The position numbers and the translations under genes were made by a program. A stretch of 64,000 nt of DNA. Source: Octopus sinensis. Its lineage: Eukaryota. Of this stretch, positions 2,548 through 37,884 are shown in pieces; within the stretch, counting starts at the first letter, position 1; every line of letters begins with the position of its first letter. The notes below the pieces were generated by a model, which was not told the DNA's origin, ran no database searches, and saw nothing but the letters and a program-made list of their open reading frames with translations. The DNA is taken from the NCBI RefSeq assembly GCF_006345805.1, contig NC_043014.1, positions 2,914,001 to 2,978,000 on the forward strand. The letters are read 5' to 3'.

Positions 2548-2673
2548 ACTACTGTACCAGCCACGGCAAAAGCCTCTGTCCAGGTGAGGGTCTCTGTGTT
2601 TCCAAGAAGGGATACAAACCAGAATGTACCTGTATTGGAATAGATTTACAGAAATCAAACACCAGAAAACACT
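2548..2673 (+). CDS. Exon 1 (in window): EGF-like module, phase 1-1
   Basis: ccag|acta ... cact|gtaagt; DYCTSHGKSLCPGEGLCVSKKGYKPECTCIGIDLQKSNTRKH(C), six-Cys EGF spacing. Confidence 0.85.
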
Positions 2674-4642
2674 GTAAGTAGGGGCCATTCTATGTTTTAT
2701 TAAATTCTACCATATTCTACCAGGCGCAGGAGTGGCTGTGTGGTAAGTAGCTTGCTTACCAACCACATGGTTCCAGGTTCAGTCCCACTGTGTGGCATCT
2801 TGGGCAAGTGTCTTCTGCTATAGCCCCGGGCCGACCAATGCCTTGTGAGTGGATTTGGTAGACGGAAACTGAAAGAAGCCTGTCGTATATTTGTATGTAT
2901 ATATATATATATGTATGTGTGTGTATGTTTGTGTTTCTGTGTTTGTCCCCCTAGCATTGCTTGACAACCGATGCTGGTGTGTTTACGTCCCCGTCACTTA
3001 GCGGTTCGGCAAAAGAGACTGATAGAATAAGTACTGGGCTTACAAAGAATAAGTTCCGGGGTCGATTTGCTCGACTAAAAGGCGATGCTCCAGCATGGCC
3101 GCAGTCAAATGACTGAAACAAGTAAAAGAGTAAAAGAGAGTATTTGTTGGATATTCTACCATATTTGTTGAACACTTTTTGTCATGTTATTTTTGTAGTT
3201 TATAGGCGCAGGAGTGGCTGTGCGGTAAGTAGCTTGCTTACCAACCACATAGTTCCAGGTTCAGTCCCACTGTGTGATACCTTGGGCAAGTGTCTTCTAC
3301 TATAGCCTCGGGCCGACCAAAGCCTTGTGAGTGAATTTGGCAGCCGGAAACTGAAAGAAGCCCGTCGTATATATGTATATATATATTTCGTTACTGCCCA
3401 CAAGGGGCTAAACATAGAAGGGACAAACAAGGACAAAGGAATCGCAATGACCCCAGTTGCAAAACTGGTACTTTATTTATCGACCCCGAAAGGATGAAAG
3501 GCAAAGTCAACCTCGGCGAAATTTGAACTCAGAACATAACAACAGACGAAATACCGCTAAACATTTCGCCTGGCGTGCTAACGTTTCTGCCAGCTCGCCA
3601 CATATATATATATGTGTGTGTGTGTGTGGTGTGTGTGTGTGTGAAATTTCCCCAAGACACCTGATGAAGGCTGGAGGGTGTATCAGCCGAAATGTTGTGT
3701 TAACAACAAACAAGATGAGGACAAATATTCATCAAATGTAAATAATGTAAATAATGTTCTAATTTGTTTCCATATTACAGGTCAGCAATCTCCATCGATT
3801 CTGTTACTTGGGAAAAGAAGTGGCCTTCATTATGTGGAACAGAACTTTGCTGATGCGAAGGGCCTTACTTCCAAGCTGCTCTTACAAGGACCCTATGATA
3901 TTCAAGCGATTGCAGTTGATGCCAAACATGGAATTGTTTATTTTACCGATTCTAAAGAAAAGGTCAGCATCCTTCTTTGATGATTTTTGAGTGTCCCTTG
4001 TAAAGTGAATGTTTTTTTGTTTTTGTTTTTTAAGGTGGTACCCGTTTTAAACTGGTACCCTGAGGTTTTATACCAGTAATACTATCTTCTCCTCTGCAGA
4101 TACTCTGTTTTATCACAGGATATTTTTGCTTTAGGTCAGGTGTAGCTTGTTGTATTTTATCTCACTAGCTTGCATTGTGAGTTCAAATCCTGCCAAGGTC
4201 AATTTTAACAGTCATCTTTATCCTCCTCCTCCTCATCATCATCATCATCACCACCACCTTCAACATTGTTGTCATCATCATCATTGTCATCATTATTATT
4301 GTTGTCATCATGATGATCACCATCACCATCATTGGCGTCATCATCATCCTGGTCATCATCATCACCATCACCATCATCATCATCATCACCACCATCATCA
4401 TCACCACCATCATCATCATCATCACCATCATCATCACCATCACCATCATCATCATCATCATCATCACCATTATCATCATCATCATCAGCCTCTGCACATT
4501 AGTGTCTTGAGTCCCAAGGGTGTGTGTGTGTGTGAGTGTGTGCGTGAGTGTGTGTGTTAGTTACTGCCTTTTACTCTTGACAGTATGTGATATTTGTAAA
4601 CGAATGCCCTTGTCATGCAAGTGGTGTCGTTTGTTAACCAAA

Positions 4643-4681
<39 letters not shown>

Positions 4682-5991
4682 TATCGTTTAGCATCCGTTT
4701 TCCATTCTGGCATGGGTTGGATGGTTTGACTGAGGACTGGCAACCCAGAAGGCTACACCAGGCTCCAATCTGATCTGGCAAGGTTTCTACAGTTGGATGC
4801 CCTTCTTAACGCCAACCACTCCAAGAGTGTAGTGGATGCTTTTTACATGCCACAGGCATGAGGGCCTGTCAGGTGGTACTGGCTTCGACCACACTTGAAT
4901 GGTGCTTTTTACGTGCCACTGGCACAGGTGCCAGTCAGGCAGTACTGTCATTAGCCACGACAATGAGTTCACTTGACTCAACAGGTCTTCTCAAGCACAG
5001 TATATTGCCCAATGATTGAAGGGTACTCTTAAATGGGCCAGTTATGTGACGCTGGCATAGGCCACAGCTATGGTCTCACTTGGCTTGCCGGGTTGTCACA
5101 AGTACAGCATATCTCTAAAGGTCCCAGTCACTTATCATTGCTTCTGTGAGGCCCAGTGTTTGATGGTCATGCTTCACCACCTCATCCCATGTCTTCCTGG
5201 GTCTACCTCTTCCACAGGTTCCCTCTACGTCTAGGGTTTGCCACATTTCCACCCAGTGCAGTCGTCCCTCTTGCACACCACATCTGATGGTTCTTATGTC
5301 CTACTTTTCTCTCAGGGCACTTACAATCTGTTGTGTGTGCACACTGACATTACACATCCAGCAGAGCATACTAGCTTCATTTCTTGCATATGGAAACGTA
5401 GGTAGTCACTGGTAAATATCACCTTACTAGGAATCAGGTGAGGGTTAGTGACAAGAAGGGCACCCAGCCATATAAAATCCACCTCAACAAATTCTGTCCA
5501 ACCCATACAAGCATGGAAAAGTGGATATTAAAAATGATGATGATGATGATGACGATAATAATGATGATGATGATGGTGGTGGTGGTGGTGGTGGTGATGA
5601 TGATGATGATGATGAAGTGAAACAGAACCAGTGCCTGTGTTTATCATTGGCATAATGACCCTCCCAAGGTACAACAAAAATATGCTTCAACACACAAATT
5701 CACAACAAGAATCTCACAAAACCAAAATCAAAACTTGAATGTATACATATGTGCTTGTTGTTAATTCATACTTTTTTGCAAATGGTATTCTTATTTTCTA
5801 GGTTATTTACCGAACTTCGGTCTACCAACGGACAGAAGCTAAAGCAATTATTTTAGCTGTGAAAACCGTACAAGGTGAGTTATATATACCTTAAAAAGTT
5901 TAATTTTCTATCAGTGTCACAGAATTTGGTGTTGCAAAAGCTGAAAGATGCTTTATATGTGTGTGTATGTGTGTGTATACATACACGTGTT

Positions 5992-6024
<33 letters not shown>

Positions 6025-7869
6025 ATGTGTTGGTGTTCATCATCATCATCATCATCATATTTTTAACATTCACTTTTCCAATGCTTACATGGGTCATACA
6101 AAATTCATTGAGGTGGGGGGTGCCGGCAATAGCAGTGGTAGCAATGGTGGTGGTGGTCGTGGTGGTGGTGGTTGTGGTCGTGGTCGTGGTCGTAGCGGTG
6201 GTGGTGGTGGTGGCGGCGGTGGTGGTGGTGGTTGTGGTGGTGGTGGCCGTAGTCGTGGCGGCAGTGGTGGTGCTGGTGGCGGTGGTGGTGGTGGTAGTGG
6301 CGGCGGTGGTAGTGGTGGTGGTGGTGGTGGTGGTGGTGGTGGTGGCGGTGGTGGTGGTGGTAGTGGTGGTGGTGGTGGCAGCGGTGGTGGTGGTGTTGAA
6401 CTTGGTCGTGGTTGTGGTTGTGGTCGTGGCGGCAGTGGTGGTAGTGGCGGCAGTGGTGGTGGTGGCGGCAGTGGTGGTAGTGGCGGCAGTGGTGGTGGTG
6501 GTGGTGGTGGTGGTGGTGGTGGTGGTGGCGGTGGTGGTGGTGGTAGTGGTGGCAGTGGTGGCAGTGGTGGTGGTGGCGGTGGTGGTGGTGGTGGTGGTGG
6601 TGGTTGTAGTGATGGTAGAAGTGGCAGTGGTAGTAATGGTGGTGGTGGTGGTGGTGGTTGTACCATTTTGCATTCAGACATTCATTAACACTGTCTAATT
6701 AGTTGCGTTACTGTTACTGTTGTTGTTGTTGTTGTCTCCCTCAAGGTTTAGCCTTTGACTGGATAACCAGGAATCTCTATTGGACCGATTCTGGAATGGA
6801 ATGCATCATGGTCGCCCGTTACAATGGTTTCAATATTGCACGCCTGATGCACCTCACCAACAGCTCCCTGAGAGCGATTGCAGTCCATCCTGCTAAAAGG
6901 TAGGTATTCTAATGTATTCTAAAAGGCGGCCAGCTGGCGGAATCGTTAGCATGCAGGGCAAAATGCTCAGAAATATTTCGTCTGTCGCTACGTTCTGAGT
7001 TCCAATTCCGCCGAGGTCGACTTTGCCTTTCATCCTTTCTAGGTCGGTAAATTAAGTACCAGTTACGCATTGGGGTTGATATAATCGACGTTAATCCGTT
7101 TGTCTGTCCTTGTTTGTCCCCTCTGAGTTTAGCCCCTTGTGGATAGTAAAGAAATAGGTATTTCGTCTGTCTTTACGTTCTGAGTTCAAATTCCACCGAG
7201 GTCGACTTTGCCTTTCATCCTTTCTAGGTCGGTAAATTAAGTACCAGTTACGCACTGGGGTTGATATAATCGACGTTAATCCGTTTGTCTGTCCTTGTTT
7301 GTCCCCTCTGAGTTTAGCCCCTTGTGGATAGTAAAGAAATAGGTATTTCGTCTGTCTTTACGTTCTGAGTTCAAATTCCACCGAGGTCGACTTTGCCTTT
7401 CATCCTTTTGGGGTTGATTAAATAAGTACCAGTTATGCACAGGGGTCGATATAATCGACTTAATACCTATGTCTGTCCTTGTTTGTCCCCTCTAAGTTTA
7501 GCCCCATTGGGCAGTAAAGAAATAGGTATTTCGTCTGTCTTTACGTTCTGAGTTCAAATTCCACCGAGGTTGACTTTGCCTTTCATCCTTTTGGGGTTGA
7601 TTAAATAAGTACCAGTTACGCACTGGGGTCGATATAATCGACATTAATCCATTTGTCTATCCCTGTTTGTCCCCTCTGTATTTAGCCCCTTGTGGGTAGT
7701 AAAGAAATAGGTATTTCGTCTGTCTTTACGTTCCGAGTTCAAATTCCGCCAAGGTCGACTTTGCCTTTCATCCTTTCGGGGTTGATTAAATAAGTACCAG
7801 TTACGCACTGGGGTCGATATAATCGACATTATTTTTATTATTATTATTATTATTATATCATTATCATTA

Positions 7870-7911
<42 letters not shown>

Positions 7912-7936
7912 TATCATTATCATTAATTTATTATTA

Positions 7937-8030
<94 letters not shown>

Positions 8031-8755: not shown

Positions 8756-8787
<32 letters not shown>

Positions 8788-8791
8788 GTTA

Positions 8792-8869: not shown

Positions 8870-10321
8870 GGTTGGTGGGTTGGCAAAAACGGTTAGAGCA
8901 TCAGAAAAAAAAATGCCTTGAATCATTTCTTTTGGCTCTAAACATTCTGAGTTCAAATCTCATTGAAGTCAACTTAGCTTTTCATCTTTCTGAAGTGGAA
9001 TCAATAAAATAACATAAGATTATTATTATTATTGTTGTTACTGTGGTAACAAAATTATACATTTTGTTGTTAGTAAACATCATTTGTTTTTCTTTTCGTT
9101 AGATTTCTCTACTGGACTGATGTCAGTGCTGCTAACGCTGGAATTGAGCGAATCGGTCTGGATGGTGAAAGCGGTCGGAAAATAATAGCCAAAGATTCCT
9201 ATGCAGTAAGTCTAGCCATTGACTTCCAATTAAACAAGTAAGTCTCTTTAGAACCATATTAACATATTTCCTCTTTGTAATCTTTGTTACTTATCCCAGT
9301 GGGATCTTGGCACAGTTCTCAGACTGGCCAGCTCCTGTCAAACCATCCAACCCATGCCAGCACGGAAGACAGATGTTAAATGATGACAAGGATAATATAC
9401 AGATATGTACACATCATCTATATTCCCCCCGCCCCGTGCCTGTCATCTCTTATGTCCCTGCCGTAAGGCTTCACTTCCACACACACCAGCTTAACCTTTT
9501 TGATACCAACCCAGCTGAAACAGGCTCTGGCTCTGTAGTACAAATGTCTTGTTTTTATAAGTTTTTAATTAAAATCTTCCACCAAACCTTAGTCACAATT
9601 TATGTTCCTAACATTAACTTAATGATAACTAAGTTATTTTACTAAATTCGTTGTTATATTTAAAATTTATTGAAAGAAACACAGAGTATCTCAACAGAAA
9701 TATGGTAACAAATGGGTAAAAATATATAATAGAGAAACAATTCTTAACCCTTTTGATACCAACCTGGCTGAAACCACCTCTGGCTCTGAGTACAAATGTC
9801 TGGTTTTCAGAAGTTTTGAATTAAAATCTTCCACCAAACCTTTGTTACAATTTATGTTCCTAACATTAACTTAATGATAACTGAGTTATTTTACTAAATT
9901 CGTTGTAATATTTAAAATAATTGAAAGGAACACAGAGCATCTCAAAATAAATACAGTAATGAAAGGGTTAATTTAATTCGTCCTTAGTCGAAAGACACCT
10001 GTTGTTATGTCCTTTATTTGCATTTGTATTTGTGTACCTTTTCTCCGTTTTTTTCTGTCCTTGTTTTCGTATACATTCGCTGCTTTCTTCTAAGGAATCT
10101 TATGCTCTTAGCTTAGTTTTTCCTTGGGGCTGGCCAGATAGGAGCAATCTTGAGTATAACCAGCTGAAATTGAAAAGATAATCTGGAATTCGACTGAGGA
10201 AAGAAAACTCTGAATGACCCATCCTTGTTTTCTATGTATTGTCTGTCTGGATGTTTTGTTGTTCCTCTTTTGTATCATCTAACTGTCTGAATGTTTTGCA
10301 TTCTTGTCCATTTTTTGTATT

Positions 10322-11573: not shown

Positions 11574-13139
11574 AAATAGTAGGGAATAAATCCAAACTTA
11601 CAGGGAAAATCAGATTTAGGATTGAATCCAATTTTATAGTAAAATATTATATTATATTAAATTAGAGCACTAATATAAATATTTCAATTACCTGAAGATT
11701 GACTGTAACCATAACTCGAATTATTACGAATTGGACAGCCATGAAACGATCGTAGTGTTTTACTCATTATCTTTTATTAAACTTTTAATACTTTTGATAT
11801 ATATTTAAAATAATATAAATTAATTTTATGTATTGGCTTAAGTTTTTCATTGTTTGATTTGCCTAATAGTGGTTTTATCTCTAATTTAATATTATATATA
11901 TACATATATATCATCATCATCATCATCATTTAGCGTCCGCTTTCCATGCTGGAATGGGTTGGACGGTTCAACTGGGGTCTGTGAAGCCAGAAGGCTGCAT
12001 TAGGCCCAGTCTGATCTGGCAGTGTTTCTACAGCTGGATGCCCTTCCTAACGCCAACCACTCCGTGAGTGTAGTGATATATAAAAAGGTGAATGTTAGCA
12101 ACAGGAAGAGCATCCAACCATCTCTCTTTTCTCTCTTTTCTCTCTTTTCTCTCTTTTACTTGTTTCAGTCATTTGACTGTGGCCATGCTGGAGCACCGCC
12201 TTTTAGTCGAGCAAATCGACCCCGGGACTTATTCTTTGTAAGCCCAGTACTTATTCTATCAGTCTCTTTTGCCGAACCGCTAAGTGACGGGGACGTAAAC
12301 ACACCAGCATCAGTTGTCAAGCAATGCTAGGGGGACAAACACAGACACACAAACACATACACACACACACACATATATATATATACATATATACGACAGG
12401 TTTCTTTCAGTTTCCGTCTACCAAATCCACTCACAAGGCATTGGTTGGCCCGGGGCTTTAGCAGAAGACACTTGCCCAAGATGCCACGCAGTGGGACTGA
12501 ACCCGGAACCATGTGGTTCGTTAGCAAGCTACTTACCACCCAGCCACTCCTATGCCTTATATATATATATATATATATATAAAAAGGTGAATGTTAGCTA
12601 CAGGAAGAGCATCCAGCCATAGAAAATATACCTTAACAAACTCCATTTGGCCCATGCAAAACATGGAAACATAGACATTAAACTAATGGACACATTTTTC
12701 TCTGAGCATATGGGTTCTAATTCTTCTCTAAAGAGTCAATATTAGAAATATCCAAGAACTAAAGATCTAAAATTCGATTTTGGTCTCTTGTAATATTTGG
12801 CATCTTCTTCTTATGGTCTTTAATGTTTTTTCTCGTTTATTCTTCCAATCCTTTCAGACTGATTTGGTTGGATAACATGTATGGAATGGTTTACATGAGT
12901 AACCTGAATGGAAGAGACAAACGCAAACTCTACCAACATGAGGCTTATGGATCTCGGCTCCTCGCCATTACTGTTCTAAAGGTAACAAAAAAAATAAAAC
13001 AACTACACATATCAATGTATGAGGTGAAGTTCTCATTGGAGATATCATCATCATCATCATCATCATCATCATTATTATTATTATTATTATTTTAATTATT
13101 ATCATCATCATCATCATCATTATCATTAGTATTGTTATT

Positions 13140-17200: not shown

Positions 17201-17700
17201 CTGAGGTTCTGGAAATAATTGTTAAGCCCTGGACAGACAGTGTATGCAATGGAAGGCCATATGTGTTTCAGTAAGACTCTGCACTATCACACATGGCTCT
17301 AGTAATACAGGAATGGATGGCTGAAAATTTTCATCATCATATAACCCCTAACATTTGACCTCCTAATTCCCTAGATCTCAATCCACTGGACTATTACATG
17401 TGGAGCATTGTTGAGAGAGGGGTCAATGAACACGTCCATAACACCAAAGATTCTTTGAAAGCTTCCATAGTCAGAGTAATGTCCAAAATGAACCAGAACC
17501 ACTTGATCCGAGTATGTAGATGATTTAGATCTCATATAGAAGCAGTTGTTGAAGCTGAAGGTGGCTTTATTGAATAAGATTATAGAAAAGAAGGTCTATT
17601 TTTATACTCACAGCATTTTTTGATAAATAAAGTTATTATCTGTTATTATATACCTGTTTTTTATAAACACGAATCTGTCCTCAAATATCTTACGCACCCA

Positions 17701-30800: not shown

Positions 30801-33800
30801 CTTCTCCAGTGACTCACCTGTCTGATCTGAAGGTTAAAGAAGTTCTGTTACTCATCATCATCATCATCATCATCGTTTAACGTCTGCTTTCCATGCTAGC
30901 ATGGGTTGGACGATTTTGACTGAGGGCTGGTGAACCAGATGGCTGTACCAGGCTCCAATCTTGAACTGGCAGAGTTTCTATAGCTGAATGCCCTTCCTAA
31001 CGCCAACCACTCCGAGAGTGTAGTGGGTGCTTTTATGTGTAGTGGGTGCTTTTACGTGTAGTGGGTGCTTTAACATGTTACTGTTAAAAATAATTGTTTG
31101 TTTAGAATAAATAAACTCAGAGACTGAAGATTTTCTTTTGTCTGATAGGGGTAGACACGTATATACATAGAAACAGGTAAAAAGAAAAAGCACCCAGTAC
31201 ACTCTGTGAAGTGTTTGGAATTAGGAAGGGCATCCAGTTGGAGAAACCCTGCCAAAATAGGTGACTGGAGCCTGCTCTGTCAAACCGTCCAACCCATGGA
31301 AAATGGACATTAAATAATAATGATGATGATGATGTATACACACAAATATATGCATATACACACACACATATATATATATATGTGTGGTCAAACAGACTTC
31401 AAAGAGGCTGGTGTTGGTCTGCATCGGCAAGACTTTCCTTGTGTAGAAACTGAACCTTTCTCATTTATTTCTTTCAACTTTACCCTGATGAAGGGCTCTG
31501 TCCAAAATGTTCGATTTCCCTCTTCTCAAAGCAAATTCATTCTACACTCTTTATTGATTTTTCTGCAATAACATAAATATATATTCTGTTGTGTCTGGGG
31601 AGAGTCATTTTCTTTTTGTGCCTTACAATATAACACACTCACCGGTAAAATTTCCACTTTTTACTAATTTTTATTTTCCTAAAATTTTCGTTGTCTTGCA
31701 ACCTTTTCAATAGTTTTGACTCTAGAGCCAAAACTATTGAAGGGGTTGCAAGACGCAGTGAAAATTTTAGGAAAATAAAAATAAGGAATAAGTGGAAATT
31801 TTACCGGTGAGTGTGTTATATTATCACTTTGATCACTTTGACCGACCAGTCCGTCAAGTGTCCATTTGACACCGCTGGTCACAGCACGCTGTCCACTTCT
31901 CTCTGGATCGCGCCTTTCTCATCCATGTGATCCCAATTGTCCTCTTGAAATCGTCACTCCACCGTCGTTCAATGGCATAAGGGATGTGCTCAAGGGAAGG
32001 TTAGACAGGACCACCCGCGCCAACCTCATTAGCAGTGCAGTTCTGCCTGCAATGTTATATGGTAGTGAAACATGGGCTACCACAAAGAGAGAAGAGCAAA
32101 GACTGGTAACGGCTCAAAGAGCCATGGAAAGGTCAATGCTTGGTATCTCGTTGAGAGAGCACATAAATAGCAACATCATCAGAAAGAAGTCCGGCATGAG
32201 AGATGTCATCGCAGAGTATACTCGCAGCAAGTATAGATGGGCTGGACACGTCGCCCGGCTCACCGATAATCGGTGTTATATTATAAGGCACAGAAAGAAA
32301 ATGACTCTCCCCAGACACAACAGAATATGCTTCAACACACGAACTCATATAAAGAATCTTGCAAACCAAATCCAAAAACGAAATATATATATATACATTT
32401 ACTCTCATCCACACAGAGACCGTTTACGAAGACTTTAACGGCTTCGTTCCAAGTGAGCTGGAAATAAAGAAATGGATAAAACCATTTTTTGCTGAAGGTA
32501 GGTACTCTTGGTTTCAAAATAGACTCACCTGTGTGTAGGAGTGCAAAAGGTTTACACCTGAGAGACATCTTGTCGATTGATGAGTTTATAAAAGTTACTG
32601 AGAGAGTTATAGCGTGACTGATGAGGACCAGGGTTAGCTAGGATGAAATGCAGGGCATCTTTGTACCGAGAAAGGGTTCTACTTAACAAAGAGGGAGCCC
32701 CTGTGCCTTGCATTTGTGGACCCGGTAAAGGCTTTTGACTGAGTTTTACATTCTCTGATCTGGTTGTTGCCAAGGAAACTGGTGTAGATTCTTTTATTCT
32801 TTTATTTGTTTCAGTCATTTGACTGTGGCCATGCTGGAGCACTGCCTTTAGCCGAACAAATCAACCCCGGGACTTATTCTTTGTAAGCCCAGTACTTATT
32901 ATATCGGTCTGTCTTGCCGAACCGCTAAGTTACAGGGACGTAATCACACCAACATCAGTTGTCAAGCGATGTTCGGGTGGGGGGGCAAACACAGACACAC
33001 AGACATATACATGCATACATACATACATACACTAAAGTTCTTGAAGGTGATGCTCCAGCATGGCCACAGTCTAATGAATGAAGCAAGTAAAAGAGAAAAG
33101 ACGTCTGTATATTTACATCTATATTCTCACACACACACAAACACACTCACACACAAATACACACATGCACACACACACACACACACACACTCACAAATAC
33201 ACACACACACAAACACAAACATTCACACACAAACACACACACACAAACACATACACACACACACAAACACACATACACAGACACACACACACAAACACAC
33301 ACACATACACACACACACAAACACACACACAAATACACACATGCATGCACAAACACACACACACACACACACAAACACATACACACACACACAAACACAC
33401 ACACGCACACACAATCCTAACGAAGGAATTCTCTTCTCTCCTCCCCTGCAACAGGTTTGGGTTACTGTCAGACGCCCCTCGTCCACCTCGGTCGATTGAT
33501 GAACTCGGTGCCAAACATCTGGGTTCCTTCTGGCACGGTGGTCGCCGCTCAGTGCTTCTCCGGTTACATGCCTTCCACTGCAGCGGCCATGGTTTGTCTC
33601 CATGGAAACTGGAGCCATGTTGTTCGATGTATTCCAGGCAAGTCTCTCAGTTTCATTTCTTTTCATCATCGACATCATCACCATCATCATCGCTGTCATC
33701 ATCATCATCATCATTACAACCATCATCATCATCGACATCATCATTACAACTATCATCATTATCATCATCATCGTCATCATAACCATCATCATCATCATTA

Positions 33801-33804
33801 CAAC

Positions 33805-33836
<32 letters not shown>

Positions 33837-36800
33837 CAACCATCATCATCATCATTACAACCATCATCATCATCATTAAACCACCATCATCATCATCATC
33901 ATTATCATTGCAACCATCATCATCATCTTCATGTCCACTTTTCCATGCTTGCACAGCTCAGACCAATTACACAATGGGGTCCGTGCCCCTAAATCAAAAA
34001 CCATCAATGAACCCTTTAGCATTCATCTTACTCTCTCAAACACAAATGCCTTTTTTTTAATCTTAATCTCCCAAATTAATCAAGGGTGGTCACTAAGCTA
34101 GCAGAATCGTTAGCACAACGAGCAAAACGTTTAATGGTAATCCACCCGTCGCTACATTCTGAGTTCAAATTCCACCACGGTCAGCTTTGCCTTTCGTCCC
34201 TTCAGGGTCGATAAATAAAGTACCAGTGAAACACTGGGGTCGATGTAATCGACTAGTCCCCACCCCACCAAAATTTCAGGCCTTGTGCCTTTAGTAGAAA
34301 GGGTTATTTTGTGTTAATCCTGGATTATCTCATAGCTTCAAGATTTCGATGATTTGATTGTTTGTTTTTAGAATGACATTGCAGGGTTGGTGTGAGAGGT
34401 CGGATCTGGCCAGTTTGGGCATAAGACAGGTAGAATATTTTGAGCAGGATATGGAGGGATTAAATGCTGGATATGGAGGGATTAAAGGCTTAAGGATTAA
34501 AGGTGGTCAGCTGGTAGAATCGTTGCAACATCGGAAAAAAGCTTTCTTTTATCTTTTGTTTCAGTCATAAGACTGTGGGCATGCTGGAGCACTGCCTTGA
34601 AGGGGCTTAATTGAACAGATTGGGGATGTAAACACACCAACACCGGTTGTCATGTGGAGACTGGGTGGAGTACAAACACAAAAATATACACACATACACA
34701 TATCGCTTTTACTCCTTTATTTGTTTCAGTCATTTGACTGCAGCCATGCTGGAGCACCACCTTTAGTCGAACAAATCGACCCTAGACTTTATTCTTTGTA
34801 AACCTAGTGCTTATTCTATCAGTCTCTTTTGCTGAACCGCTAAGTTATGAGGACGTAGACACACCGACATCAGTTGTCAAGCGTGGGTAGGTGAGAGAGA
34901 ATACAAGATCTCAATCGTACGTTTTGAATTCAGGGTGGCACCGGTCATTGGACATAGTTTTTCTGATGCCTTTTGATCAGATTTTTTCAGGGCTCTCAAA
35001 TTTAGAATCCTGAAATACTGTGCTGAAGAGCAAGAATGATGGAATGGAAATGTGGTTTTGGCATTTTCCATATCTATCTAACCCCGAAACATGTCCACAG
35101 TTAATCAAATATATATATATAATGAAATTATTGTATACAGTGCTCAGGTGCACCACAACTTGTCAGAAAGTGCGTATAAAGTATATGCAGTAATGTATAA
35201 ATGTCTGGAAAGCGAACAGTGTATGACTCGGATACATGCTTGTGTGTGTATGGAGGGGAGAAAGATCAGGTGTAGTGTTGGCGAATCTCAGGAAGCATGG
35301 AAGTTTTGAAGGATGCAGTGCTCCGACAACTAACAACCGATGCCGGCAGTTTGTTCCACGCTTCAGCAACTCTCAGCGTGAAAAACCAGGTGGATTCGTT
35401 AGTTTTTTTCTCTTTGCCTACCTTGATTGTTTTTGAGTATATGTTGTCTGGGAGATTTTCTTATGGTAGAGAAATACCTAGTTTTTTGGCTGCTATTTCT
35501 AAATTTCTGTATGTGATGAAGCAAATTTTTTTGCTGAACCCTAATTATAATTATACTCATAATTATAAATATTATTATATATACATACATTTTTTTTTTA
35601 CTTGTTTCAGTCATTTGACTGCGGCCATGCTGGAGCACCGCCTTTAGTCGAGCAAATCAACCCCAGGACTTATTCTTTGTAAGCCCAGTACTTATTCTAT
35701 CGGTCTCTTTTTGCCGAACCGCTAAACACACCAGCATCGGTTGTCAAGCAACGCTAGGGGAAAACACAGGCACACAAACATATATATATATATATACATA
35801 TATACAACAGGCTTCTTTAAGTTTCCGTCTACCAAATCCACTCACAAGGCTTTGGTTGGCCCGAGGTTATAGTAGAAGACACTTACCCAAGATGCCACGC
35901 AGTGGGACTGAACCCGAAACCATGTGGTTTGTAAGCAAGCTACTTACCACACACCCACTCCTACGCTACGAAAGGGTACATATATATATATATATATATA
36001 TATACACGTGTGTATGTATATATAATGTTATAATAAAAACCACAAGCTTTGTTAATTACACCTACCTAGGGTTTTGTGGCCCCAACATTCATTTCACTGT
36101 GTGTGTGTGTGTCCCCTACCAATCCTTGATAATTGGTGTCAGGTATGTTTACGTCCCCACAACTTAGCAGTTTGGCAAAAGAGACCAATAGTATAAGTAC
36201 CAGGATGAAAACAAAAAAAAAATGTATTGGAATTGATTTATTCAACTAAAATTACTCGACACGGTGCTGCAGCATGGCCACAGTCTCACGACTGATTCAG
36301 ATAAAAGACTAAAGTCAAGACTGACAGGGTTGCTGTTTCTTGTTTAGATCCTGAGCTGCCCCTTCATGGAGACCTGAAGAAAGGGTACATCAAGTTCACG
36401 TCCAGTCGTCTCTTCATTGTACCCATTGCTTTAAATTACATCAACGTGATGTGCATTGGAGCCGGAGGCGGAGGATACGATGGTAAAAGTGCCTACGGAA
36501 AGGCTGGAGACGGGTGGCCATCCAAGTTCAAAGGTCTCGTAGCCGAGGGTGGAAAAGGTGGAAGTAAGACAGAAGGTAAGTCAGATGTACTTCATACCTT
36601 CTTATCATCATCCTCATCATCAACAACATCTAATGTCCACTTTTCCATGCTTGCATGCATTGGACAGAGTTTTGCTGGAGCAGATTTTCTTGCAACCGGA
36701 TGCTCTTCCTGGTCCCAACCCTCACCTGTTTCTGTACGATCTGTCAGGTTTTTCCACAGAAGACTAGTAAACAAACCACCCCGCTTGTATGACAGTCATG

Positions 36801-37671
36801 CTTATTTACAACCATACACGTGTGTATATTTATGCATATATCATCATCGTTTAACGTCCGCTTTCCATGCTAGCATGGGTTGGACGGTTCAACTGGGGTC
36901 TGGGGAGCCCGAAGGCTACACCAGGCCAGTCAGATCTGGCAGTGTTTCTACAGCTGGATGCCCTTCGTAACGCCAACCACTGCGTGAGTGTAGTGGGTGC
37001 TTTTTATGTGCCACTGGCACAGGTGCCAGATGAGGCTTCCCAGACCCCAGTTGAACCGTCCAACCCATGCTAGCATGGAAAACAGACGTTAAACGATGAT
37101 GATGATGATGATGCCCATAATAAAGAGAAACACCAACGATGGGCCCATTGAAAACTCAAATCCAATAACCCTAAAATCTGGCTCAAATAGCAAATGGATG
37201 TCACCAAAGTTGTGTTAAATTATTTTCTTTTTCTTTTTACATTACAGGTGGCGCTGGTGGACTGGGGACCGTGGCAGATGGAGGTAGAGGAGGCTGGAGC
37301 CGCACCCAATGCACAGCTGGTGGAGCAGCTGGTGGCGCCAATGAATGGCTCAAGGATTCTCGGTTGTATGCCTTCTGCGGAGCAGGTGGGATCTCAGAGT
37401 GTCCGATCGGACCAAGACCTCGTTCCCCAAAACATGGACCTGGCGGCACAGCTAACAATGGCACAATGGCTGGACTCTACGGTGGGGGCGGCGCTGCTGT
37501 TTTCAAAATGGGTGCCGGAGGTGGCGGCGGTTTCTCCAGGGGTTCAATCCGAATTAATTCCTGGATGTCATTCCTGTGACAGTGGGCAAGCCCGGGGATG
37601 CTTCATATGGACAGCCTGGTGGTGGTGTGGTGGTGGTGTCTTGGGGGTGGCCATCTTTCGAAGAGCTGTGA
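2548..37671 (+). CDS. Multi-exon gene (17 exons in window, 5' end upstream): EGF-YWTD propeller-EGF-YWTD propeller-Sushi/CCP-glycine-rich domain protein, LRP-like ectodomain without a TM segment
   Basis: All 17 exons have AG acceptors and GT donors (one GC donor), and all 16 junction phases chain into one frame. About 895 aa if the last-exon frameshift is corrected, 864 aa as assembled. N-glycosylation sequons (NSS, NIT, NKS, NHT, NWS, NGT) fit a secretory-pathway protein. Confidence 0.9.
2723..3140 (+). mobile_element. tRNA/CORE-like SINE family B; other copies at ~3205-3380, 10545-10970, 12150-12555 (-), 15820-16235, 16270-16446+17702-17890 (-), 24195-24610, 28665-29060, 35590-35965 (-), 57125-57530 (-), 59090-59490 (-), 60865-61030+61540-61805, 62748-63130, 63160-63450 (-)
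   Basis: GGCGCAGGAGTGGCTGTGTGGTAAG head, GGTTCAGTCCC B box, CCTTGGGCAAGTGTCTT segment, central (TA/TG)n, (AGTAAAAG)n tail. Confidence 0.85.
3640..3760 (+). mobile_element. Penelope-like terminal fragment with hammerhead-like motif (3656-3701)
   Basis: gacac-CTGATGA-a-GGCTG..CAGCC-GAAA tgt t-gtgtt; the same family recurs at 27845-28130. Confidence 0.55.
3781..3962 (+). CDS. Exon 2: start of YWTD propeller 1
   Basis: ttacag|gtc ... aag|gtcagc; QQSPSILLLGKRSG...IQAIAVDAKHGIVYFTDSKEK. Confidence 0.88.
4220..4490 (+). repeat. (CAT/CAC)n microsatellite; other simple repeats at ~700-1100, 2180-2520, 7830-8030, 18390-18895, 33125-33410, 33665-33930, 58200-58710
   Basis: Direct reading. Confidence 0.9.
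4680..5400 (-). mobile_element. Degenerate RTE 3' end (ORF tail + UTR)
   Basis: Reverse complement of RGRPRKTWDEVVKHD-type coding at ~5150-5390 plus the shared (GAT)n-tailed UTR. Confidence 0.65.
5802..5874 (+). CDS. Exon 3: propeller 1
   Basis: ttctag|gtt ... caag|gtgagt; VIYRTSVYQRTEAKAIILAVKTVQ(G), phase 0-1 links exons 2 and 4. Confidence 0.85.
6125..6662 (+). repeat. (GGT/GGC/AGT)n microsatellite
   Basis: Direct reading. Confidence 0.95.
6746..6899 (+). CDS. Exon 4: YWTD repeat
   Basis: tcaag|gttta ... aaag|gtaggt; [28 protein letters not shown]...LRAIAVHPAK(R). Confidence 0.93.
6922..7830 (+). repeat. SINE family A head followed by ~4.6 tandem ~185-bp body units
   Basis: Unit starts at 6974, 7159, 7344, 7527, 7712. 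Confidence 0.85.
8030..8756 (-). mobile_element. 5'-truncated R4/Dong-like non-LTR retrotransposon (RLE type), degenerate
   Basis: DQSLPTRNY..CRICGDGQETINHIISSCPVLAKKEYIHRHD (CCHC + RHD), EKLSKYKDL..IPLIVGALG, LGTAHILRRTL; (TAA)n on both sides. Confidence 0.8.
9103..9237 (+). CDS. Exon 5: YWTD repeat
   Basis: cgttag|att ... acaa|gtaagt; FLYWTDVSAANAGIERIGLDGESGRKIIAKDSYAVSLAIDFQLN(K). Confidence 0.92.
9491..9971 (+). mobile_element. Tandem dimer of a ~230-bp piggyBac-type MITE
   Basis: TTAACC(C)TTT...AAAGGGTTAA ends; two units joined by aatatataatagagaaacaattc. Confidence 0.7.
10340..10515 (+). mobile_element. Short PLE-like element with hammerhead-variant motif (10385-10420), flanked by (TA)n
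   Basis: cttt-CTGTAGA-a-GAGC ttag GCTC-GAA-ACGT-A-aaag; homologs at 60437-60850. Confidence 0.5.
12858..12981 (+). CDS. Exon 6: YWTD-type repeat
   Basis: tttcag|act ... aag|gtaaca; LIWLDNMYGMVYMSNLNGRDKRKLYQHEAYGSRLLAITVLK. Confidence 0.9.
13040..14245 (+). repeat. Compound (ATT/ATC/ACT)n microsatellite with ~418-bp higher-order duplication
   Basis: Landmarks TTTAATTCTTATC at ~13295/13710 and TTTAATTGTTATC at ~13547/13965. Confidence 0.85.
14713..14863 (+). CDS. Exon 7: end of propeller 1
   Basis: ttgcag|aat ... acaa|gtaaga; NYVVYSDWYHENTGLYTINKHTG...LALAFLHSNSQLKST. Confidence 0.9.
16447..17701 (+). mobile_element. Tc1/mariner-superfamily DD37D (maT-type) transposon with decayed transposase at 16533-17577
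   Basis: TA|CAGGGCGCGTAAAGTATTTGAGGAC ... GTCCTCAAATATCTTACGCACCCAG|TA terminal inverted repeats; motifs FQxDSA and PPNSLDLNPLDY with 37 residues between the 2nd and 3rd catalytic D; multiple stops. Confidence 0.88.
17977..18093 (+). CDS. Exon 8: LRP-type EGF module, phase 1-1
   Basis: ttccag|atg ... gcaa|gtgagt; NACVKNNGGCYHICLPKKNGHRCLCAIGFHLNDNGQCTA. Confidence 0.93.
18215..18390 (+). mobile_element. Short PLE-like element with decayed hammerhead (18260-18294); truncated homolog at 11405-11530
   Basis: CTGACAA-a-GAGC tct GCTC-GAA-ACGT-T-aaac. Confidence 0.5.
19013..19237 (-). mobile_element. tRNA-derived SINE family A, complete copy with 17-bp TSD; other copies at ~1-388, 3385-3600, 25295-25512, 29295-29490, 34085-34305, 43225-43440, 53610-53790, 55375-56030
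   Basis: GGCGAGCTGGCAGAA head, GAGTTCAAATTCC B box, GCCTTTCATCCTTTCGGGGTCGATAA central domain; TSD CCTGAAGAACACATACC. Confidence 0.85.
19403..19638. mobile_element. Fold-back MITE-like element (~113-bp arms)
   Basis: Left arm 19403-19516 is the reverse complement of 19530-19638, with few mismatches. Confidence 0.7.
19714..20421. mobile_element. Longer copy of the same fold-back element, right arm split by a SINE
   Basis: GGAGATGTAC...GTACATCTC ends; SINE at 20051-20348 with ~12-bp TSD (ctttccacactg / ccttccacgctg). Confidence 0.72.
20051..20348 (+). mobile_element. tRNA-derived SINE with V-domain-like segment
   Basis: A box TGGCCTAGTGG, B box GGTTCAAATC, segment CCTGCGACGGACCGGCGTCCCGTCCAGG; related fragment at ~56990-57110 (-). 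Confidence 0.7.
20453..20601 (+). CDS. Exon 9: start of propeller 2
   Basis: ttaaag|ata ... atg|gtgaga; NITYHEFLLIADQRLRRLYQINL...PIDIAFDSKEMM. Confidence 0.88.
20712..20847. repeat. Fold-back of SINE family B tail (57-bp arms, 22-nt loop)
   Basis: 20712-20768 pairs with 20791-20847. Confidence 0.88.
21040..21259 (+). mobile_element. piggyBac-type MITE
   Basis: TTAA|CCCTTTAG ... CTAAAGGG|TTAA; empty paralogous site with a single TTAA at 23483-23486. Confidence 0.85.
21737..22123 (+). mobile_element. Non-autonomous Helitron/Helentron-like element
   Basis: 5' TACTAGCAGTATCGCCCGGCGTTGCTC, 3' CAGACAGCTTTATATGAATAG; sister element at 48274-48638. Confidence 0.55.
23151..23241 (+). CDS. Exon 10: YWTD repeat
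   Basis: ctgtag|gtc ... atat|gtaaga; VYWTDAEDDSISRSKLNGDYYETLLQDSSI. Confidence 0.92.
25568..26105 (+). mobile_element. (AAT)n-embedded short retroelement; other copies at 27682-27786 (+), 55082-55358 (+) and ~56063-56395 (-)
   Basis: Shared 3' end GCACTGCTCTCTCACTC(AAT)n, variable 5' truncation, AAT/ATT tracts at the 3' end of every copy. Confidence 0.7.
26450..26612 (+). CDS. Exon 11: propeller 2
   Basis: gtgcag|cat ... ctgg|gtaagt; SFGEIVIEPTTRLLYFIDNKSGNIGVLSMDTKHYRILIQTGLNHTFGLAIDLFS(G). Confidence 0.9.
27040..28130 (+). mobile_element. Penelope-like element relics (27040-27185 and 27845-28130), interrupted by other repeats
   Basis: Decayed hammerhead at 27861-27906; translation YGADLRLQRRHIEKLHQKLACLSNH resembles the N-terminus of PLE ORFs. 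Confidence 0.55.
28218..28345 (+). CDS. Exon 12: propeller 2 (divergent blade)
   Basis: ttgcag|ggc ... gaca|gtgagt; AIYITSIKKNSASLWSFHPVHKSIKHVMTDLSDPRGIVWWID. Confidence 0.87.
29095..29254 (+). CDS. Exon 13: propeller 2
   Basis: ttttag|gga ... agag|gtgagt; RIYVAVSGNIEAVSTDELLGGEHEVAVSNVDPYDIAADFMYLYWTDKQSGAVK(R). Confidence 0.9.
29510..29950 (+). mobile_element. RTE 3'-UTR-derived short elements (family C, more than 20 copies on both strands across the window)
   Basis: GGCGTTAGGAAGGGCATCCAGCTGTAGAAAC...GACGTTAAA(YGA)(TGA)n, the same as the UTR/tail of the RTE at 41517-43123. Confidence 0.85.
29978..30075 (+). CDS. Exon 14: end of propeller 2
   Basis: ttccag|aat ... caag|gtaatg; ITRLKGTDTSILLEKDFFIQPVGLTIFKKENQ(G). 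Confidence 0.87.
31581..32328. mobile_element. MITE with long terminal inverted repeats; right repeat split by an RTE insertion
   Basis: ATATTCTGTTGTGTCTGGGGAGAGTCATTTTC...CACTCACCGGTAAAATTTCCAC is mirrored at 31790-31823 plus 32284-32328. Confidence 0.75.
31824..32272 (-). mobile_element. RTE-clade LINE 3' fragment with internal inversion and 11-bp TSD
   Basis: 31968-32272 (+) encodes VLPAMLYGSETW...RWAGHVARLTDNR; 31824-31967 (-) encodes RRWSDD..W.RKAR.R.KW..* plus a (CAAAGTGAT)2 tail; TSD GTGTTATATTA. Confidence 0.82.
32570..32760 (+). mobile_element. Degenerate RTE reverse-transcriptase fragment
   Basis: KVTERVI..DEMQGIFVPRKGST..AFVDPVKAFD (RT domain motifs, with stops and frameshift). 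Confidence 0.6.
33455..33637 (+). CDS. Exon 15: Sushi/CCP module, phase 1-1, GC donor
   Basis: caacag|gtt ... ccag|gcaagt; YCQTPLVHLGRL...VAAQCFSGYMPSTAAAMVCLHGNWSHVVRCIP (C-xx-P, C-xx-GY, C-xx-G-x-W, C pattern). Confidence 0.85.
36348..36575 (+). CDS. Exon 16: N-terminal half of glycine-rich domain
   Basis: gtttag|atc ... gaag|gtaagt; ...IKFTSSRLFIVPIALNYINVMCIGAGGGGYDGKSAYGKAGDGWPSKFKGLVAEGGKGGSKTE. Confidence 0.88.
37248..37671 (+). CDS. Exon 17 (terminal): C-terminal half of glycine-rich domain, apparent 1-nt frameshift at 37560/37561
   Basis: ttacag|gtg; GGAGGLG...GLYGGGGAAVFKMGAGGGGGFSRGSIRIN. As assembled the frame stops at 37577-37579. A second frame from 37561 reads LDVIPVTVGKPGDASYGQPGGGVVVVSWGWPSFEEL then TGA TGA (37669-37674). 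Confidence 0.82.
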
Positions 37672-37884
37672 TGATTCATTTTTCAAAGAATTTTACATAT
37701 TTGTTTACTTTTTTTTTTATTAACTTAACATTTTCCCCACCATTAATTACATGTTCATTAAGTATATCAAATGTTCATTTGTTGGATTTTCTGTTATTTT
37801 TTGGGGAGTTTTTTTTTCTTTGTTTCCACGTCCGTTTTTCAAATTTTCACGAGAATTTATTGGAGAAATTAAAAAAAAAAATTT

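What the first reader, a model, noticed from the sequence alone, without database searches (positions are those of the whole stretch)
2548..37674. Apparently soluble LRP-like protein ending in Sushi + ALK/phage-type glycine-rich domain: an architecture I do not recognise
Seen: 17 phase-consistent exons give EGF-YWTD propeller-EGF-YWTD propeller-CCP-Gly-rich domain-stop, with no hydrophobic TM segment or NPxY tail in the window and several N-glycosylation sequons. Established: LDLR-family receptors end with TM + cytoplasmic tail; the glycine-rich fold occurs in ALK/LTK ectodomains and in phage/bacterial surface and fibre proteins. Inference: a lineage-specific secreted ligand-binding scaffold, such as a decoy receptor, recognition protein or matrix component, coupling propeller ligand sites to a polyglycine-II domain. 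This is the best candidate for an undescribed system here. The N-terminus is outside the window, so a type II membrane anchor cannot be excluded.
Basis: partly seen in the sequence, partly recalled or inferred. Interest (0 to 1): 0.8.

Follow-up and report, generated by a model that had tools for sequence, protein, structure and literature searches.

The report
Secreted mollusc LRP-like protein, glycine-rich head
The window holds most of a real, strongly conserved octopus gene for a secreted protein that joins three LDL-receptor-type beta-propellers to a complement-type module and a phage-fibre-like glycine-rich domain; all molluscs examined have it, databases mislabel it "LRP5/6-like", and I found no study of it.

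Summary
On the + strand, 19 exons (2005-37674) with canonical splice sites encode residues 258-1228 of a 1228-residue protein. Spliced together, the exons reproduce the Octopus vulgaris protein CAI9737162 exactly. The in-window coding sequence differs from O. vulgaris by 24 synonymous and 0 non-synonymous changes.

The full-length orthologue begins with a signal-peptide-like segment and a third propeller, both upstream of the window. It has no transmembrane segment, no LDL-A repeat and no NPxY motif, so the protein is secreted.

The architecture is SP-(YWTD propeller-EGF)x2-propeller-CCP-glycine-rich domain. It is collinear in cephalopods, gastropods and bivalves, where automatic annotation names it "LRP4/5/6-like" or "uncharacterized". 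No paper cites the accessions I searched.

The glycine-rich domain models confidently (pLDDT 86-88). It matches predicted phage and giant-virus glycine-rich domains (Foldseek E 3e-11). ALK/LTK, Pam3 fibre and Bxb1 tail tip are its top solved neighbours, but none is significant, and neither Pfam nor HMM links it to ALK.

The stop at 37576 comes from a 1-nt deletion in a G-run, probably an assembly error. The true end is 37674.

Function is inferred, not shown: an extracellular adaptor or ligand trap. It is a new variant of known kinds, of moderate interest.

The parts
2005..2149 (+). Exon encoding the last blade of propeller 1 (aa 259-307).
   Evidence: tblastn; splice join to 2548; sequence read.
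2548..2673 (+). EGF-like module 1. It has six Cys; the last Cys codon is completed by the next exon.
   Evidence: Cys pattern read directly; no Pfam hit for this module.
3781..3962 (+). Propeller 2, exon 1.
5802..5874 (+). Propeller 2, small exon (VIYRTSVYQRTEAKAIILAVKTVQ).
6746..6899 (+). Propeller 2 exon containing the YWTD blade (NLYWTDSG).
9103..9237 (+). Propeller 2 exon (FLYWTDVS blade).
12858..12981 (+). Propeller 2 exon.
14713..14863 (+). Propeller 2, last exon.
17977..18093 (+). EGF module 2.
   Evidence: Pfam FXa_inhibition 1.7e-8.
20453..20601 (+). Propeller 3, exon 1.
23151..23241 (+). Propeller 3 exon (VYWTDAEDDS blade).
26450..26612 (+). Propeller 3 exon.
28218..28345 (+). Propeller 3 exon.
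29095..29254 (+). Propeller 3 exon (LYWTDKQS blade).
29978..30075 (+). Propeller 3, last exon.
32417..32497 (+). Linker exon. It stands where the bivalve orthologues have a Cys-containing, EGF-like stretch.
   Evidence: compared with P0006 and P0007.
33455..33637 (+). CCP/Sushi module. The exon is phase 1-1 and is followed by a GC donor, which is conserved in O. vulgaris.
   Evidence: Foldseek CCP hits with probability 1.0.
36348..36575 (+). Glycine-rich domain, first exon: N-terminal beta-strands and the first Gly-rich motifs.
37248..37674 (+). Glycine-rich domain, last exon. The stop as written is at 37576-37578. The real stop is at 37672-37674, once the missing G is restored.
37561..37565 (+). 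Site of the 1-nt deletion in a G-run. TGGAT here stands for TGGGAT in O. vulgaris, which shifts the frame.
   Evidence: DNA comparison with L001; intact tails in O. vulgaris and in a Logan contig.

Best explanation
What it is (shown). The window carries the 3' two-thirds of a single-copy-looking octopus gene. The window is O. sinensis-like: its translation matches XP_029647613, including the premature end. The protein is a roughly 1228-residue secreted glycoprotein with this layout:
- a signal-peptide-like segment;
- YWTD propeller 1, then an EGF-like module;
- YWTD propeller 2, then an EGF module;
- YWTD propeller 3, then a short linker;
- one CCP/Sushi module;
- a C-terminal glycine-rich domain of about 217 residues (26% Gly, three invariant Cys).
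The glycine-rich domain is predicted to be a beta-sandwich that carries a bundle of Gly-rich extended segments. This is the same kind of module as the TNF-like plus glycine-rich receptor-binding heads of phage fibres.

The protein has no LDL-A repeats, no transmembrane segment and no endocytosis motif, so it is not an LDLR-family receptor and not LRP5/6. The same collinear architecture is conserved across Cephalopoda, Gastropoda and Bivalvia.

How it probably works (inferred). It is released into the extracellular space and acts as a bivalent or multivalent adaptor, or as a ligand trap. The top faces of the three propellers would bind protein ligands, as in LRP4/5/6, LDLR and nidogen. The distal CCP-glycine-rich head would provide a second recognition surface, with a rigid conserved Gly-rich stem and variable Cys-braced loops (aa about 1170-1220, the least conserved and least confident part of the domain).

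Strong purifying selection, and what appears to be one orthologue per species, favour a conserved developmental or matrix-type role over a diversifying immune one.

The premature stop in this window is most likely a homopolymer error in the assembly.

Confidence is split: about 0.95 for the anatomy (one conserved gene, secreted, this architecture) and about 0.4 for the adaptor / ligand-trap mechanism. The single figure given is a compromise between the two.
For: Anatomy:
- The exon map and splice sites have a unique solution and reproduce CAI9737162 exactly.
- Against the O. vulgaris locus there are 24 synonymous and 0 non-synonymous changes over 971 codons, and all splice sites are conserved, including the GC donor.

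One gene rather than two:
- Full-length collinear orthologues exist in Mactra, Mizuhopecten, Batillaria and Pomacea.
- Partial collinear models exist in Potamilus, Ruditapes, Haliotis, Lottia, Patella, Mytilus, Solemya and Sepia.

Secretion:
- The N-terminus is hydrophobic (MSVSQLILVLNVCNILYIDA).
- No other TM-like peak exists apart from a beta-strand of the glycine-rich domain, and there is no NPxY.
- Pfam reports no Ldl_recept_a in eight family members.

Propellers: phmmer against PDB gives LRP2 2e-193, LRP4 2e-150 and LRP6 4.5e-77.

CCP: the family profile hits factor H at 3.6e-44, and Foldseek CCP hits have probability 1.0.

Glycine-rich domain:
- AF2 models have pLDDT 87.7 and 85.7, pTM 0.86. 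The high-confidence stretch of about 130 residues has almost no DSSP helix or strand.
- Foldseek against BFVD gives 52 hits at E<=1e-3. The best is a Satyrvirus protein (E 3.1e-11, TM 0.52/0.60). Many others are "Glycine-rich domain-containing protein" entries from tailed phages, syn9 Gp38 and tail fibres.
- PHROG 863 (annotated tail fiber assembly) matches 10 of 15 members, best 2.6e-8.
- Pfam Gly_rich_2 matches 12 of 15 members weakly.

What such heads do elsewhere: the Pam3 gp24 TNF-like plus glycine-rich domains and S16 gp38 are proposed or reported to recognise host receptors through variable distal loops on a conserved Gly stem (PMC9608196; bioRxiv 10.1101/2023.11.25.568672). The ALK glycine-rich domain is described there as key for binding peptide activators.

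Assembly error: O. vulgaris has GGG where the window has GG, and the 35 out-of-frame codons after it are identical to O. vulgaris.
Against: - There is no functional, expression or binding evidence of any kind. The mechanism rests on analogy with domain families.
- I saw no transcript evidence directly. The joins rest on comparative gene models, some of which are automatic and faulty: three O. bimaculoides models differ at the 3' end, and the Sepia model is fused to a hydrophobic tail.
- Solved-structure matches for the glycine-rich domain are not significant (best E 9e-3, TM below 0.25).
- The signal peptide was judged by hydropathy only, not by SignalP.
- "Single copy" is inferred from one representative cluster per species in a 50%-clustered library, not from genome-wide counts.
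Confidence: 0.6

Rival explanations
1. Humoral pattern-recognition protein or opsonin. The phage-fibre-like glycine-rich head would bind microbial surface structures, and the propellers and CCP module would recruit host effectors or receptors.
For: The nearest structural relatives of the head are receptor-binding parts of phage fibres (PMC9608196). CCP modules are typical of complement regulators. The protein is secreted and glycosylated.
Against: There appears to be one orthologue per species. There are zero non-synonymous against 24 synonymous changes between two octopus species. The head is the most conserved module across mollusc classes, at 36-44% identity. This pattern is the opposite of diversifying immune recognition genes. 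No expression data are available.
Confidence: 0.17
2. Structural matrix or basement-membrane linker, nidogen-like. The propellers would bind laminin-type EGF modules, and the head would anchor to another matrix component or oligomerise.
For: It is a secreted protein with YWTD propellers and EGF modules, as nidogen is (nidogen propeller hit 2.8e-17). It is conserved and slowly evolving. Many bivalve and gastropod members end in a conserved extra Cys that could form an intermolecular disulfide.
Against: The propellers are much closer to LRP2/4/6 than to nidogen. No nidogen G1/G2 or other matrix domains are present. The terminal Cys is absent in cephalopods.
Confidence: 0.15
3. Membrane-tethered receptor after all, through an alternative 3' exon or an anchor not visible here.
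For: The Sepia pharaonis model CAE1173048 replaces the last 8 residues with a hydrophobic tail of about 100 residues.
Against: The window has no homologue of that tail in the 26 kb downstream, only repeat and retroelement-like ORFs. Every complete model in 12 other species ends shortly after the glycine-rich domain. A related decapod contig ends ...SWGWPDFH followed by a stop (P0002).
Confidence: 0.05
4. Annotation chimera or pseudogene: two neighbouring genes wrongly joined, or a decaying gene, given the frameshift.
For: The frameshift at about 37563 truncates the last core strands of the domain as written. The O. bimaculoides models disagree at the 3' end.
Against: The domain order is collinear in eight aligned orthologues from three mollusc classes. 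All phases and splice sites are compatible and conserved. The synonymous to non-synonymous ratio is 24:0, and the out-of-frame tail is perfectly conserved.
Confidence: 0.03

Closest known systems
LRP5/6, LRP4 and LRP2 ectodomain YWTD propeller-EGF tandems (LDLR family)
   Same: It has tandem six-bladed YWTD propellers, each followed by an EGF module. Sequence similarity to solved structures is strong: LRP2 2e-193, LRP4 2e-150, LRP6 4.5e-77. This similarity is the source of the automatic names.
   Different: It has three propellers rather than four. It has no LDL-A repeats, no TM helix and no cytoplasmic NPxY. It carries a C-terminal CCP module and glycine-rich domain instead. The third propeller is not followed by a clear EGF module in octopus.
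Phage and giant-virus glycine-rich domains (Pfam Gly_rich_2 PF21722; cyanophage Pam3 gp24 TNF-like plus glycine-rich head; mycobacteriophage Bxb1 tail tip; S16-type gp38)
   Same: The predicted fold matches BFVD models (E down to 3e-11, TM 0.5-0.6). The same entries are the top solved neighbours. PHROG 863 and Gly_rich_2 profile hits occur in most family members. The motif order is shared: IGGGGGG ... VTVG.GG ... G.G.VVV.W.
   Different: There is no BLAST-level similarity to any of 50,697 phage genomes. The window's own sequence scores below the Pfam gathering threshold (16.6 against 24.3 bits). The context is a eukaryotic secreted protein, fused to a CCP module. Invariant cysteines are present. 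No trimerising helix or chaperone partner is evident.
ALK/LTK TNF-like plus glycine-rich (TG) ligand-binding supradomain
   Same: Both are extracellular metazoan domains that combine a beta-sandwich with many Gly-rich extended segments. ALK, LTK and the C. elegans ALK GRD are among the top 15 solved-structure neighbours of the domain-only model.
   Different: The Foldseek matches are not significant (E 0.04-0.7, probability 0.11 or less, TM below 0.2). There is no PF12810 hit and no phmmer or hmmsearch hit to ALK/LTK chains. No kinase, MAM domain or membrane-proximal EGF is present. Its ligands are unknown.
Branchiostoma glycine-rich-domain proteins (XP_035673048; B. lanceolatum records named "F2")
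   Same: They carry the same glycine-rich domain type, 46-50% identical to the octopus domain over about 200 residues. They are the only non-mollusc proteins found with it.
   Different: The architecture is different: two copies of the domain in a 1633-residue protein whose remaining regions look (by eye, not scanned) like Cys-rich, Ig-like and trypsin-like modules, with no YWTD propeller or CCP next to the domain seen in the sequence.
Nidogen (secreted YWTD protein)
   Same: It is secreted, has no TM segment, and has a YWTD propeller used for protein binding (hit 2.8e-17).
   Different: Nidogen has one propeller, and its other domains are unrelated. It has no CCP module or glycine-rich head.

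Membership tests
LDL-receptor family receptor (including LRP5/6, the name given by automatic annotation) | YWTD (Ldl_recept_b) beta-propeller with flanking EGF modules | tested here: met
   Pfam Ldl_recept_b 7.4e-40 in the O. bimaculoides orthologue and 3.5e-13 in window exons. PDB hits to LRP2/4/6.
LDL-receptor family receptor (including LRP5/6, the name given by automatic annotation) | LDL-A (class A) ligand-binding repeats | tested here: not met
   No Ldl_recept_a hit at E<=0.01 in any of eight family members scanned in full.
LDL-receptor family receptor (including LRP5/6, the name given by automatic annotation) | Single transmembrane helix and a cytoplasmic tail with NPxY or PPPSP-type motifs | tested here: not met
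   The hydropathy scan shows only the N-terminal signal-like peak and a beta-strand of the glycine-rich domain. NPxY is absent. The proteins end 5-40 residues after the glycine-rich domain. No TM exon homologue lies in the 26 kb downstream.
CCP / Sushi module | About 60 residues with four Cys, a conserved Trp and the CCP fold | tested here: met
   The family profile hits factor H at 3.6e-44. A single-sequence search gives 1.2e-6. Foldseek CCP hits have probability 1.0 and rmsd 1.9-3 A. Pfam Sushi is below threshold for the octopus sequence alone (14.7 against 20.7 bits).
Gly_rich_2 (PF21722) / phage-type glycine-rich domain | Match to the family profile above the curated threshold | tested here: inconclusive
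   The correctly spliced octopus domain scores 16.6 bits, below the 24.3 cut-off. Twelve of 15 family members match at E<1, best 2.9e-4. The 27.6-bit score came from a draft that included a spurious exon. PHROG 863 matches 10 of 15, best 2.6e-8.
Gly_rich_2 (PF21722) / phage-type glycine-rich domain | Shared three-dimensional fold | tested here: met
   The AF2 model (pLDDT 87.7) against BFVD gives 52 hits at E<=1e-3, best 3.1e-11 with TM 0.52/0.60. Many are annotated as glycine-rich domain-containing, tail fibre or Gp38. This compares a prediction with predictions, not with experimental structures.
ALK/LTK glycine-rich (TG) domain, Pfam PF12810 | Sequence-profile match to the ALK/LTK glycine-rich domain | tested here: not met
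   No PF12810 hit. No ALK/LTK chain found in phmmer or hmmsearch against PDB, even at E<=10.
ALK/LTK glycine-rich (TG) domain, Pfam PF12810 | Structural superposition on solved ALK/LTK TG domains | tested here: inconclusive
   ALK, LTK and the C. elegans ALK GRD rank 5-15 among PDB neighbours of the domain-only model, but at E 0.07-0.7, probability 0.08 or less and TM 0.12-0.17.
Polyglycine-II / PPII helical bundle domains | Gly-rich segments with PPII backbone angles packed in a hydrogen-bonded lattice | not testable with these tools
The only indirect signs are about 130 residues of high pLDDT with almost no DSSP helix or strand, and 11-12 conserved Gly-rich motifs.

The most novel reading that the evidence does not exclude
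The C-terminal module is a true homologue of the ALK/LTK ligand-binding TG supradomain and of phage fibre heads. If so, this mollusc family, together with the amphioxus proteins, would be the first non-kinase metazoan carriers of a polyglycine-II recognition head. It could be a relic of the domain pool from which ALK was assembled, or an ancient capture from a virus. It might act as a soluble binder of an ALKAL/Jeb/HEN-1-like cytokine or of another small ligand.
Probability: 0.15. Interest if true: 0.75.

Novelty: new variant of a known kind. Interest (0 to 1): 0.5.

Why it matters
Glycine-rich polyproline-II bundle domains are rare. The review read here lists only snow-flea antifreeze proteins, Obg, acetophenone carboxylase, phage gp38, ALK and LTK (bioRxiv 10.1101/2023.11.25.568672). 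A conserved secreted animal protein family that carries such a head on an LRP-type scaffold would:

(i) add a eukaryotic context outside the receptor kinases;
(ii) give a tractable, cysteine-braced, naturally soluble example for structural work;
(iii) bear on where the unusual ligand-binding domain of ALK came from;
(iv) correct a systematic mis-annotation. These proteins are named LRP4/5/6-like in mollusc genomes and could be mistaken for Wnt co-receptors in comparative studies.

It also flags a probable indel error in the O. sinensis assembly that truncates the RefSeq protein.

Tried and rejected
- The search for homologous proteins with the raw CCP plus glycine-rich query. The candidate list filled up (8000 candidates), probably with Gly-run words, and nothing scored.
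- The same tool with a draft of propeller 3 plus CCP. It found nothing, although the orthologues are in the collection, so the word index apparently does not reach them.
- A Gly-masked family profile. It returned one unnamed ENA fragment.
- tblastn of the glycine-rich domain against 50,697 phage genomes. No match.
- hmmsearch of the domain-only profile against PDB. It returned only linker-type noise.
- Literature searches by accession (six accessions), by Pfam id and by product name. Nothing was found on this family.
- Looking up 20 further short hits for taxonomy. Most are unnamed contig fragments.
Rejected: it is absent from the octopus models and the mapped CDS, and the CCP exon joins 36348 in phase.
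- A TM-encoding downstream exon. Rejected for this window.
- Pfam on intronic and downstream ORFs, to name the transposable elements. Inconclusive.
Full report
**1. What is in the sequence**

The window is eukaryotic, AT-rich and full of interspersed repeats. Stop-to-stop ORFs on the + strand contain YWTD-type blades, EGF-like Cys patterns, a CCP-like exon and two Gly-rich exons. A rough concatenation of these gave Pfam Ldl_recept_b (3.5e-13), FXa_inhibition/EGF (1.7e-8), weak Sushi and Gly_rich_2.

An exhaustive phmmer search of 1.84 billion representative proteins, using the spliced CCP plus Gly-rich part, returned 49 hits. The best was a 1142-residue protein, 98% identical to the query. Cluster look-up showed this cluster holds the following models:
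- Octopus bimaculoides XP_052830941 and XP_014771505, named "LRP5(-like)";
- O. sinensis XP_029647613, named "LRP5-like";
- O. vulgaris CAI9737162.

The O. sinensis model ends ...SIRINSWMSFL, exactly as this window reads. The window therefore comes from O. sinensis or something indistinguishable from it.

**2. Exon map**

tblastn of the O. vulgaris protein, then a search over all GT/GC donors and AG acceptors near each boundary, gave one solution per intron. The exons are:

2005-2149, 2548-2673, 3781-3962, 5802-5874, 6746-6899, 9103-9237, 12858-12981, 14713-14863, 17977-18093, 20453-20601, 23151-23241, 26450-26612, 28218-28345, 29095-29254, 29978-30075, 32417-32497, 33455-33637, 36348-36575 and 37248-37674.

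All introns are GT-AG except a GC donor after the CCP exon. The spliced translation equals CAI9737162 residues 308-1193, and again 1194-1228 after a frameshift.

- There are 18 exons in that span, not 17.
- One more exon lies at 2005-2149.
- The ORF near 34358 is not part of the gene.

Residues 1-257 (the signal-like segment and most of propeller 1) lie upstream of the window. In the O. vulgaris locus L001 the gene spans 59 kb, and window position 1 corresponds to about 21 kb into it.

**3. Is it a working gene, and one gene?**

The in-window coding sequence differs from O. vulgaris at 24 synonymous and 0 non-synonymous sites in 971 codons. All 19 exons keep their splice sites, including the GC donor. 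The introns are only about 95% identical. That is strong purifying selection.

The whole domain order is collinear in the four other full-length proteins (Mactra, Mizuhopecten, Batillaria, Pomacea). It is also collinear in partial models from Potamilus, Ruditapes, Haliotis, Lottia, Patella, Mytilus, Solemya and Sepia. A chance fusion of two neighbouring genes would not be reproduced in three mollusc classes.

I did not see transcripts directly.

**4. The frameshift**

As written, the frame stops at 37576-37578. In the +2 frame the next 35 codons read DVIPVTVGKPGDASYGQPGGGVVVVSWGWPSFEEL followed by a stop. This is identical to the O. vulgaris tail and nearly identical to a Logan contig from another octopus.

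At the DNA level the window has TCCTGGATGTC where O. vulgaris has TCCTGGGATGTC. One G is missing from a homopolymer run.

The lost segment contains the invariant VTVG and VVV.W strands of the domain, and it shows no other change from O. vulgaris. An assembly error is therefore the most likely cause; my estimate is about 0.85. The RefSeq O. sinensis protein inherits the truncation.

**5. Domains**

*Propellers and EGF modules.* These are close to LRP2/LRP4/LRP6. No family member has an LDL-A repeat. Hydropathy shows only an N-terminal signal-like peak and a beta-strand inside the Gly-rich domain. There is no NPxY. The proteins end a few residues after the Gly-rich domain.

*CCP module.* This is unambiguous.

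*C-terminal domain.* It is about 217 residues, 26% Gly, with three invariant Cys and 11-12 conserved Gly-rich motifs.
- It is the most conserved module across molluscs, at 36-44% identity. Excluding Gly columns the figure is 23-31%, similar to the propellers.
- AlphaFold2 with the family alignment gives confident models (pLDDT 87.7 with CCP, 85.7 alone; pTM 0.86).
- In these models, beta-strands at both ends form a sandwich. A high-confidence middle stretch of about 130 residues has almost no DSSP helix or strand. That is what polyproline-II-type segments look like to DSSP, but I could not measure backbone angles.

**6. What the head resembles**

Against predicted viral structures (BFVD) there are 52 Foldseek hits at E<=1e-3. 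The best is a Satyrvirus (giant virus) protein, E 3.1e-11, TM 0.52/0.60, rmsd 5.6 A over 224 columns. Dozens of "Glycine-rich domain-containing proteins" of tailed phages, syn9 Gp38 and tail fibre proteins follow.

Against solved structures nothing reaches E 1e-3. Even so, the ten best neighbours of the domain-only model are all of one kind:
- the Bxb1 tail tip (9D93, E 9e-3);
- the Pam3 fibre (7YFW, 7YPX);
- ALK and LTK.

The C. elegans ALK GRD follows at rank 15. These are the solved proteins of this kind that I know of.

At sequence level the picture is as follows:
- PHROG 863 matches 10 of 15 family members, best 2.6e-8.
- Gly_rich_2 matches 12 of 15, but below threshold for the octopus sequence.
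- PF12810 (the ALK type) never matches.
- ALK/LTK never appear in PDB sequence searches.
- tblastn against phage genomes finds nothing.

My reading is that the head belongs to the phage and giant-virus glycine-rich domain class by fold. Its relation to ALK is plausible but unproven.

Published work describes these heads as recognition modules. [quoted passage not shown] The S16 gp38 loops on a PPII bundle recognise outer-membrane proteins, and the ALK glycine-rich domain is described as key for binding peptide activators (bioRxiv 10.1101/2023.11.25.568672; PMC10605310).

**7. Distribution and naming**

Every hit that shares the architecture is a mollusc. The only non-mollusc proteins with this domain type are from Branchiostoma. 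There the domain occurs twice in a 1633-residue protein whose other regions look, by eye, like Cys-rich, Ig-like and trypsin-like modules.

Source names include the following:
- "LRP5-like", "LRP6-like" and "LRP4";
- "Sushi domain-containing";
- "EGF-like domain-containing";
- "PE-PGRS family protein-like";
- "uncharacterized".

No held paper mentions the six accessions I searched, and none mentions Gly_rich_2 by name or number; the one Pfam-id hit (PF12810) is a fungal genome paper. The sequences are therefore public, but I found no paper describing the family.

**8. How it most likely works**

Shown:
- It is a secreted multi-domain protein.
- It is under strong constraint.
- It has three LRP-type propellers and a CCP-linked phage-type Gly-rich head.

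Inferred:
- The propellers bind protein ligands on their top faces, as in LRP4/5/6, LDLR and nidogen (established knowledge of those families).
- The head gives a second recognition surface. It has a rigid conserved stem and a variable, Cys-braced loop region, which has the lowest pLDDT and the lowest conservation in the domain.
- With no membrane anchor, the protein would bridge or sequester extracellular partners.

The 24:0 substitution pattern, the apparent single orthologue per species and the high conservation of the head argue for a conserved developmental or matrix role. They argue against a fast-evolving immune receptor, though the immune reading is not excluded.

**9. Verdict**

The finding is a new variant, an unprecedented combination of known domain kinds, conserved across Mollusca and mis-annotated in databases. 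Interest is moderate: notable for people who study ALK or PPII-bundle domains and for mollusc genomics, but there are no functional data.

Noticed in passing
window 37561-37565: A 1-nt deletion in a G-run, relative to O. vulgaris, creates a premature stop at 37576-37578. The RefSeq O. sinensis protein XP_029647613 carries the same truncated end. This is probably an assembly indel.
   Followed up: yes
The remaining 5' exons lie outside the window, about 21 kb in the O. vulgaris locus.
   Followed up: yes
window 33638-33900: Directly after the CCP exon's GC donor there is a long (CAT)n-type microsatellite. It would read as poly-His in frame, which makes naive ORF extension of this exon misleading.
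   Followed up: no
window 5900-6700: A GC-rich trinucleotide repeat of about 800 bp sits in the intron between exons 5802-5874 and 6746-6899. It gives long poly-Gly/poly-Pro/poly-Thr ORFs on both strands and spurious tblastn matches to the glycine-rich domain.
   Followed up: partly
window 31866-32438 (+), 41457-42314 (+), 47738-48058 (-), 16623-17520 (+): These ORFs look like transposable-element remnants: non-LTR retrotransposon C-terminal regions that share the '...RLRWYGHVARM...' motif, and a mariner-like fragment. One lies inside an intron of the gene. A Pfam scan gave only weak PHD/HTH hits.
   Followed up: partly
window 38000-64000: No convincing protein-coding gene was seen downstream of the gene on either strand. 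The region holds only repeats, SINE-like copies (a recurring '...QSFDCGHAGAPPL...' element) and low-complexity ORFs.
   Followed up: partly
Sepia pharaonis CAE1173048 (P0061), residues about 585-684: In this cuttlefish orthologue model, a hydrophobic tail of about 100 residues replaces the normal ...SWGWPDFH end. It is probably a mis-splice into a neighbouring gene. No counterpart exists in this window.
   Followed up: partly
Branchiostoma floridae XP_035673048 (P0008) and B. lanceolatum CAH1277161-65: These amphioxus proteins carry two copies of the same glycine-rich domain, 46-50% identical to octopus. The rest of the sequence looks (by eye, not scanned) like Cys-rich, Ig-like and trypsin-like regions. 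They are annotated "F2" or uncharacterized. They are the only non-mollusc relatives of the domain that I found.
   Followed up: no
O. bimaculoides models XP_052830941, XP_014771505, UPI000695A10E (P0050, P0053, P0001): Three different, mutually inconsistent 3' ends (...KTEDKQ, ...FCGAEFNFCE, ...ISECPIG), and two of the models skip EGF module 2. The O. bimaculoides annotations of this gene are incomplete.
   Followed up: no
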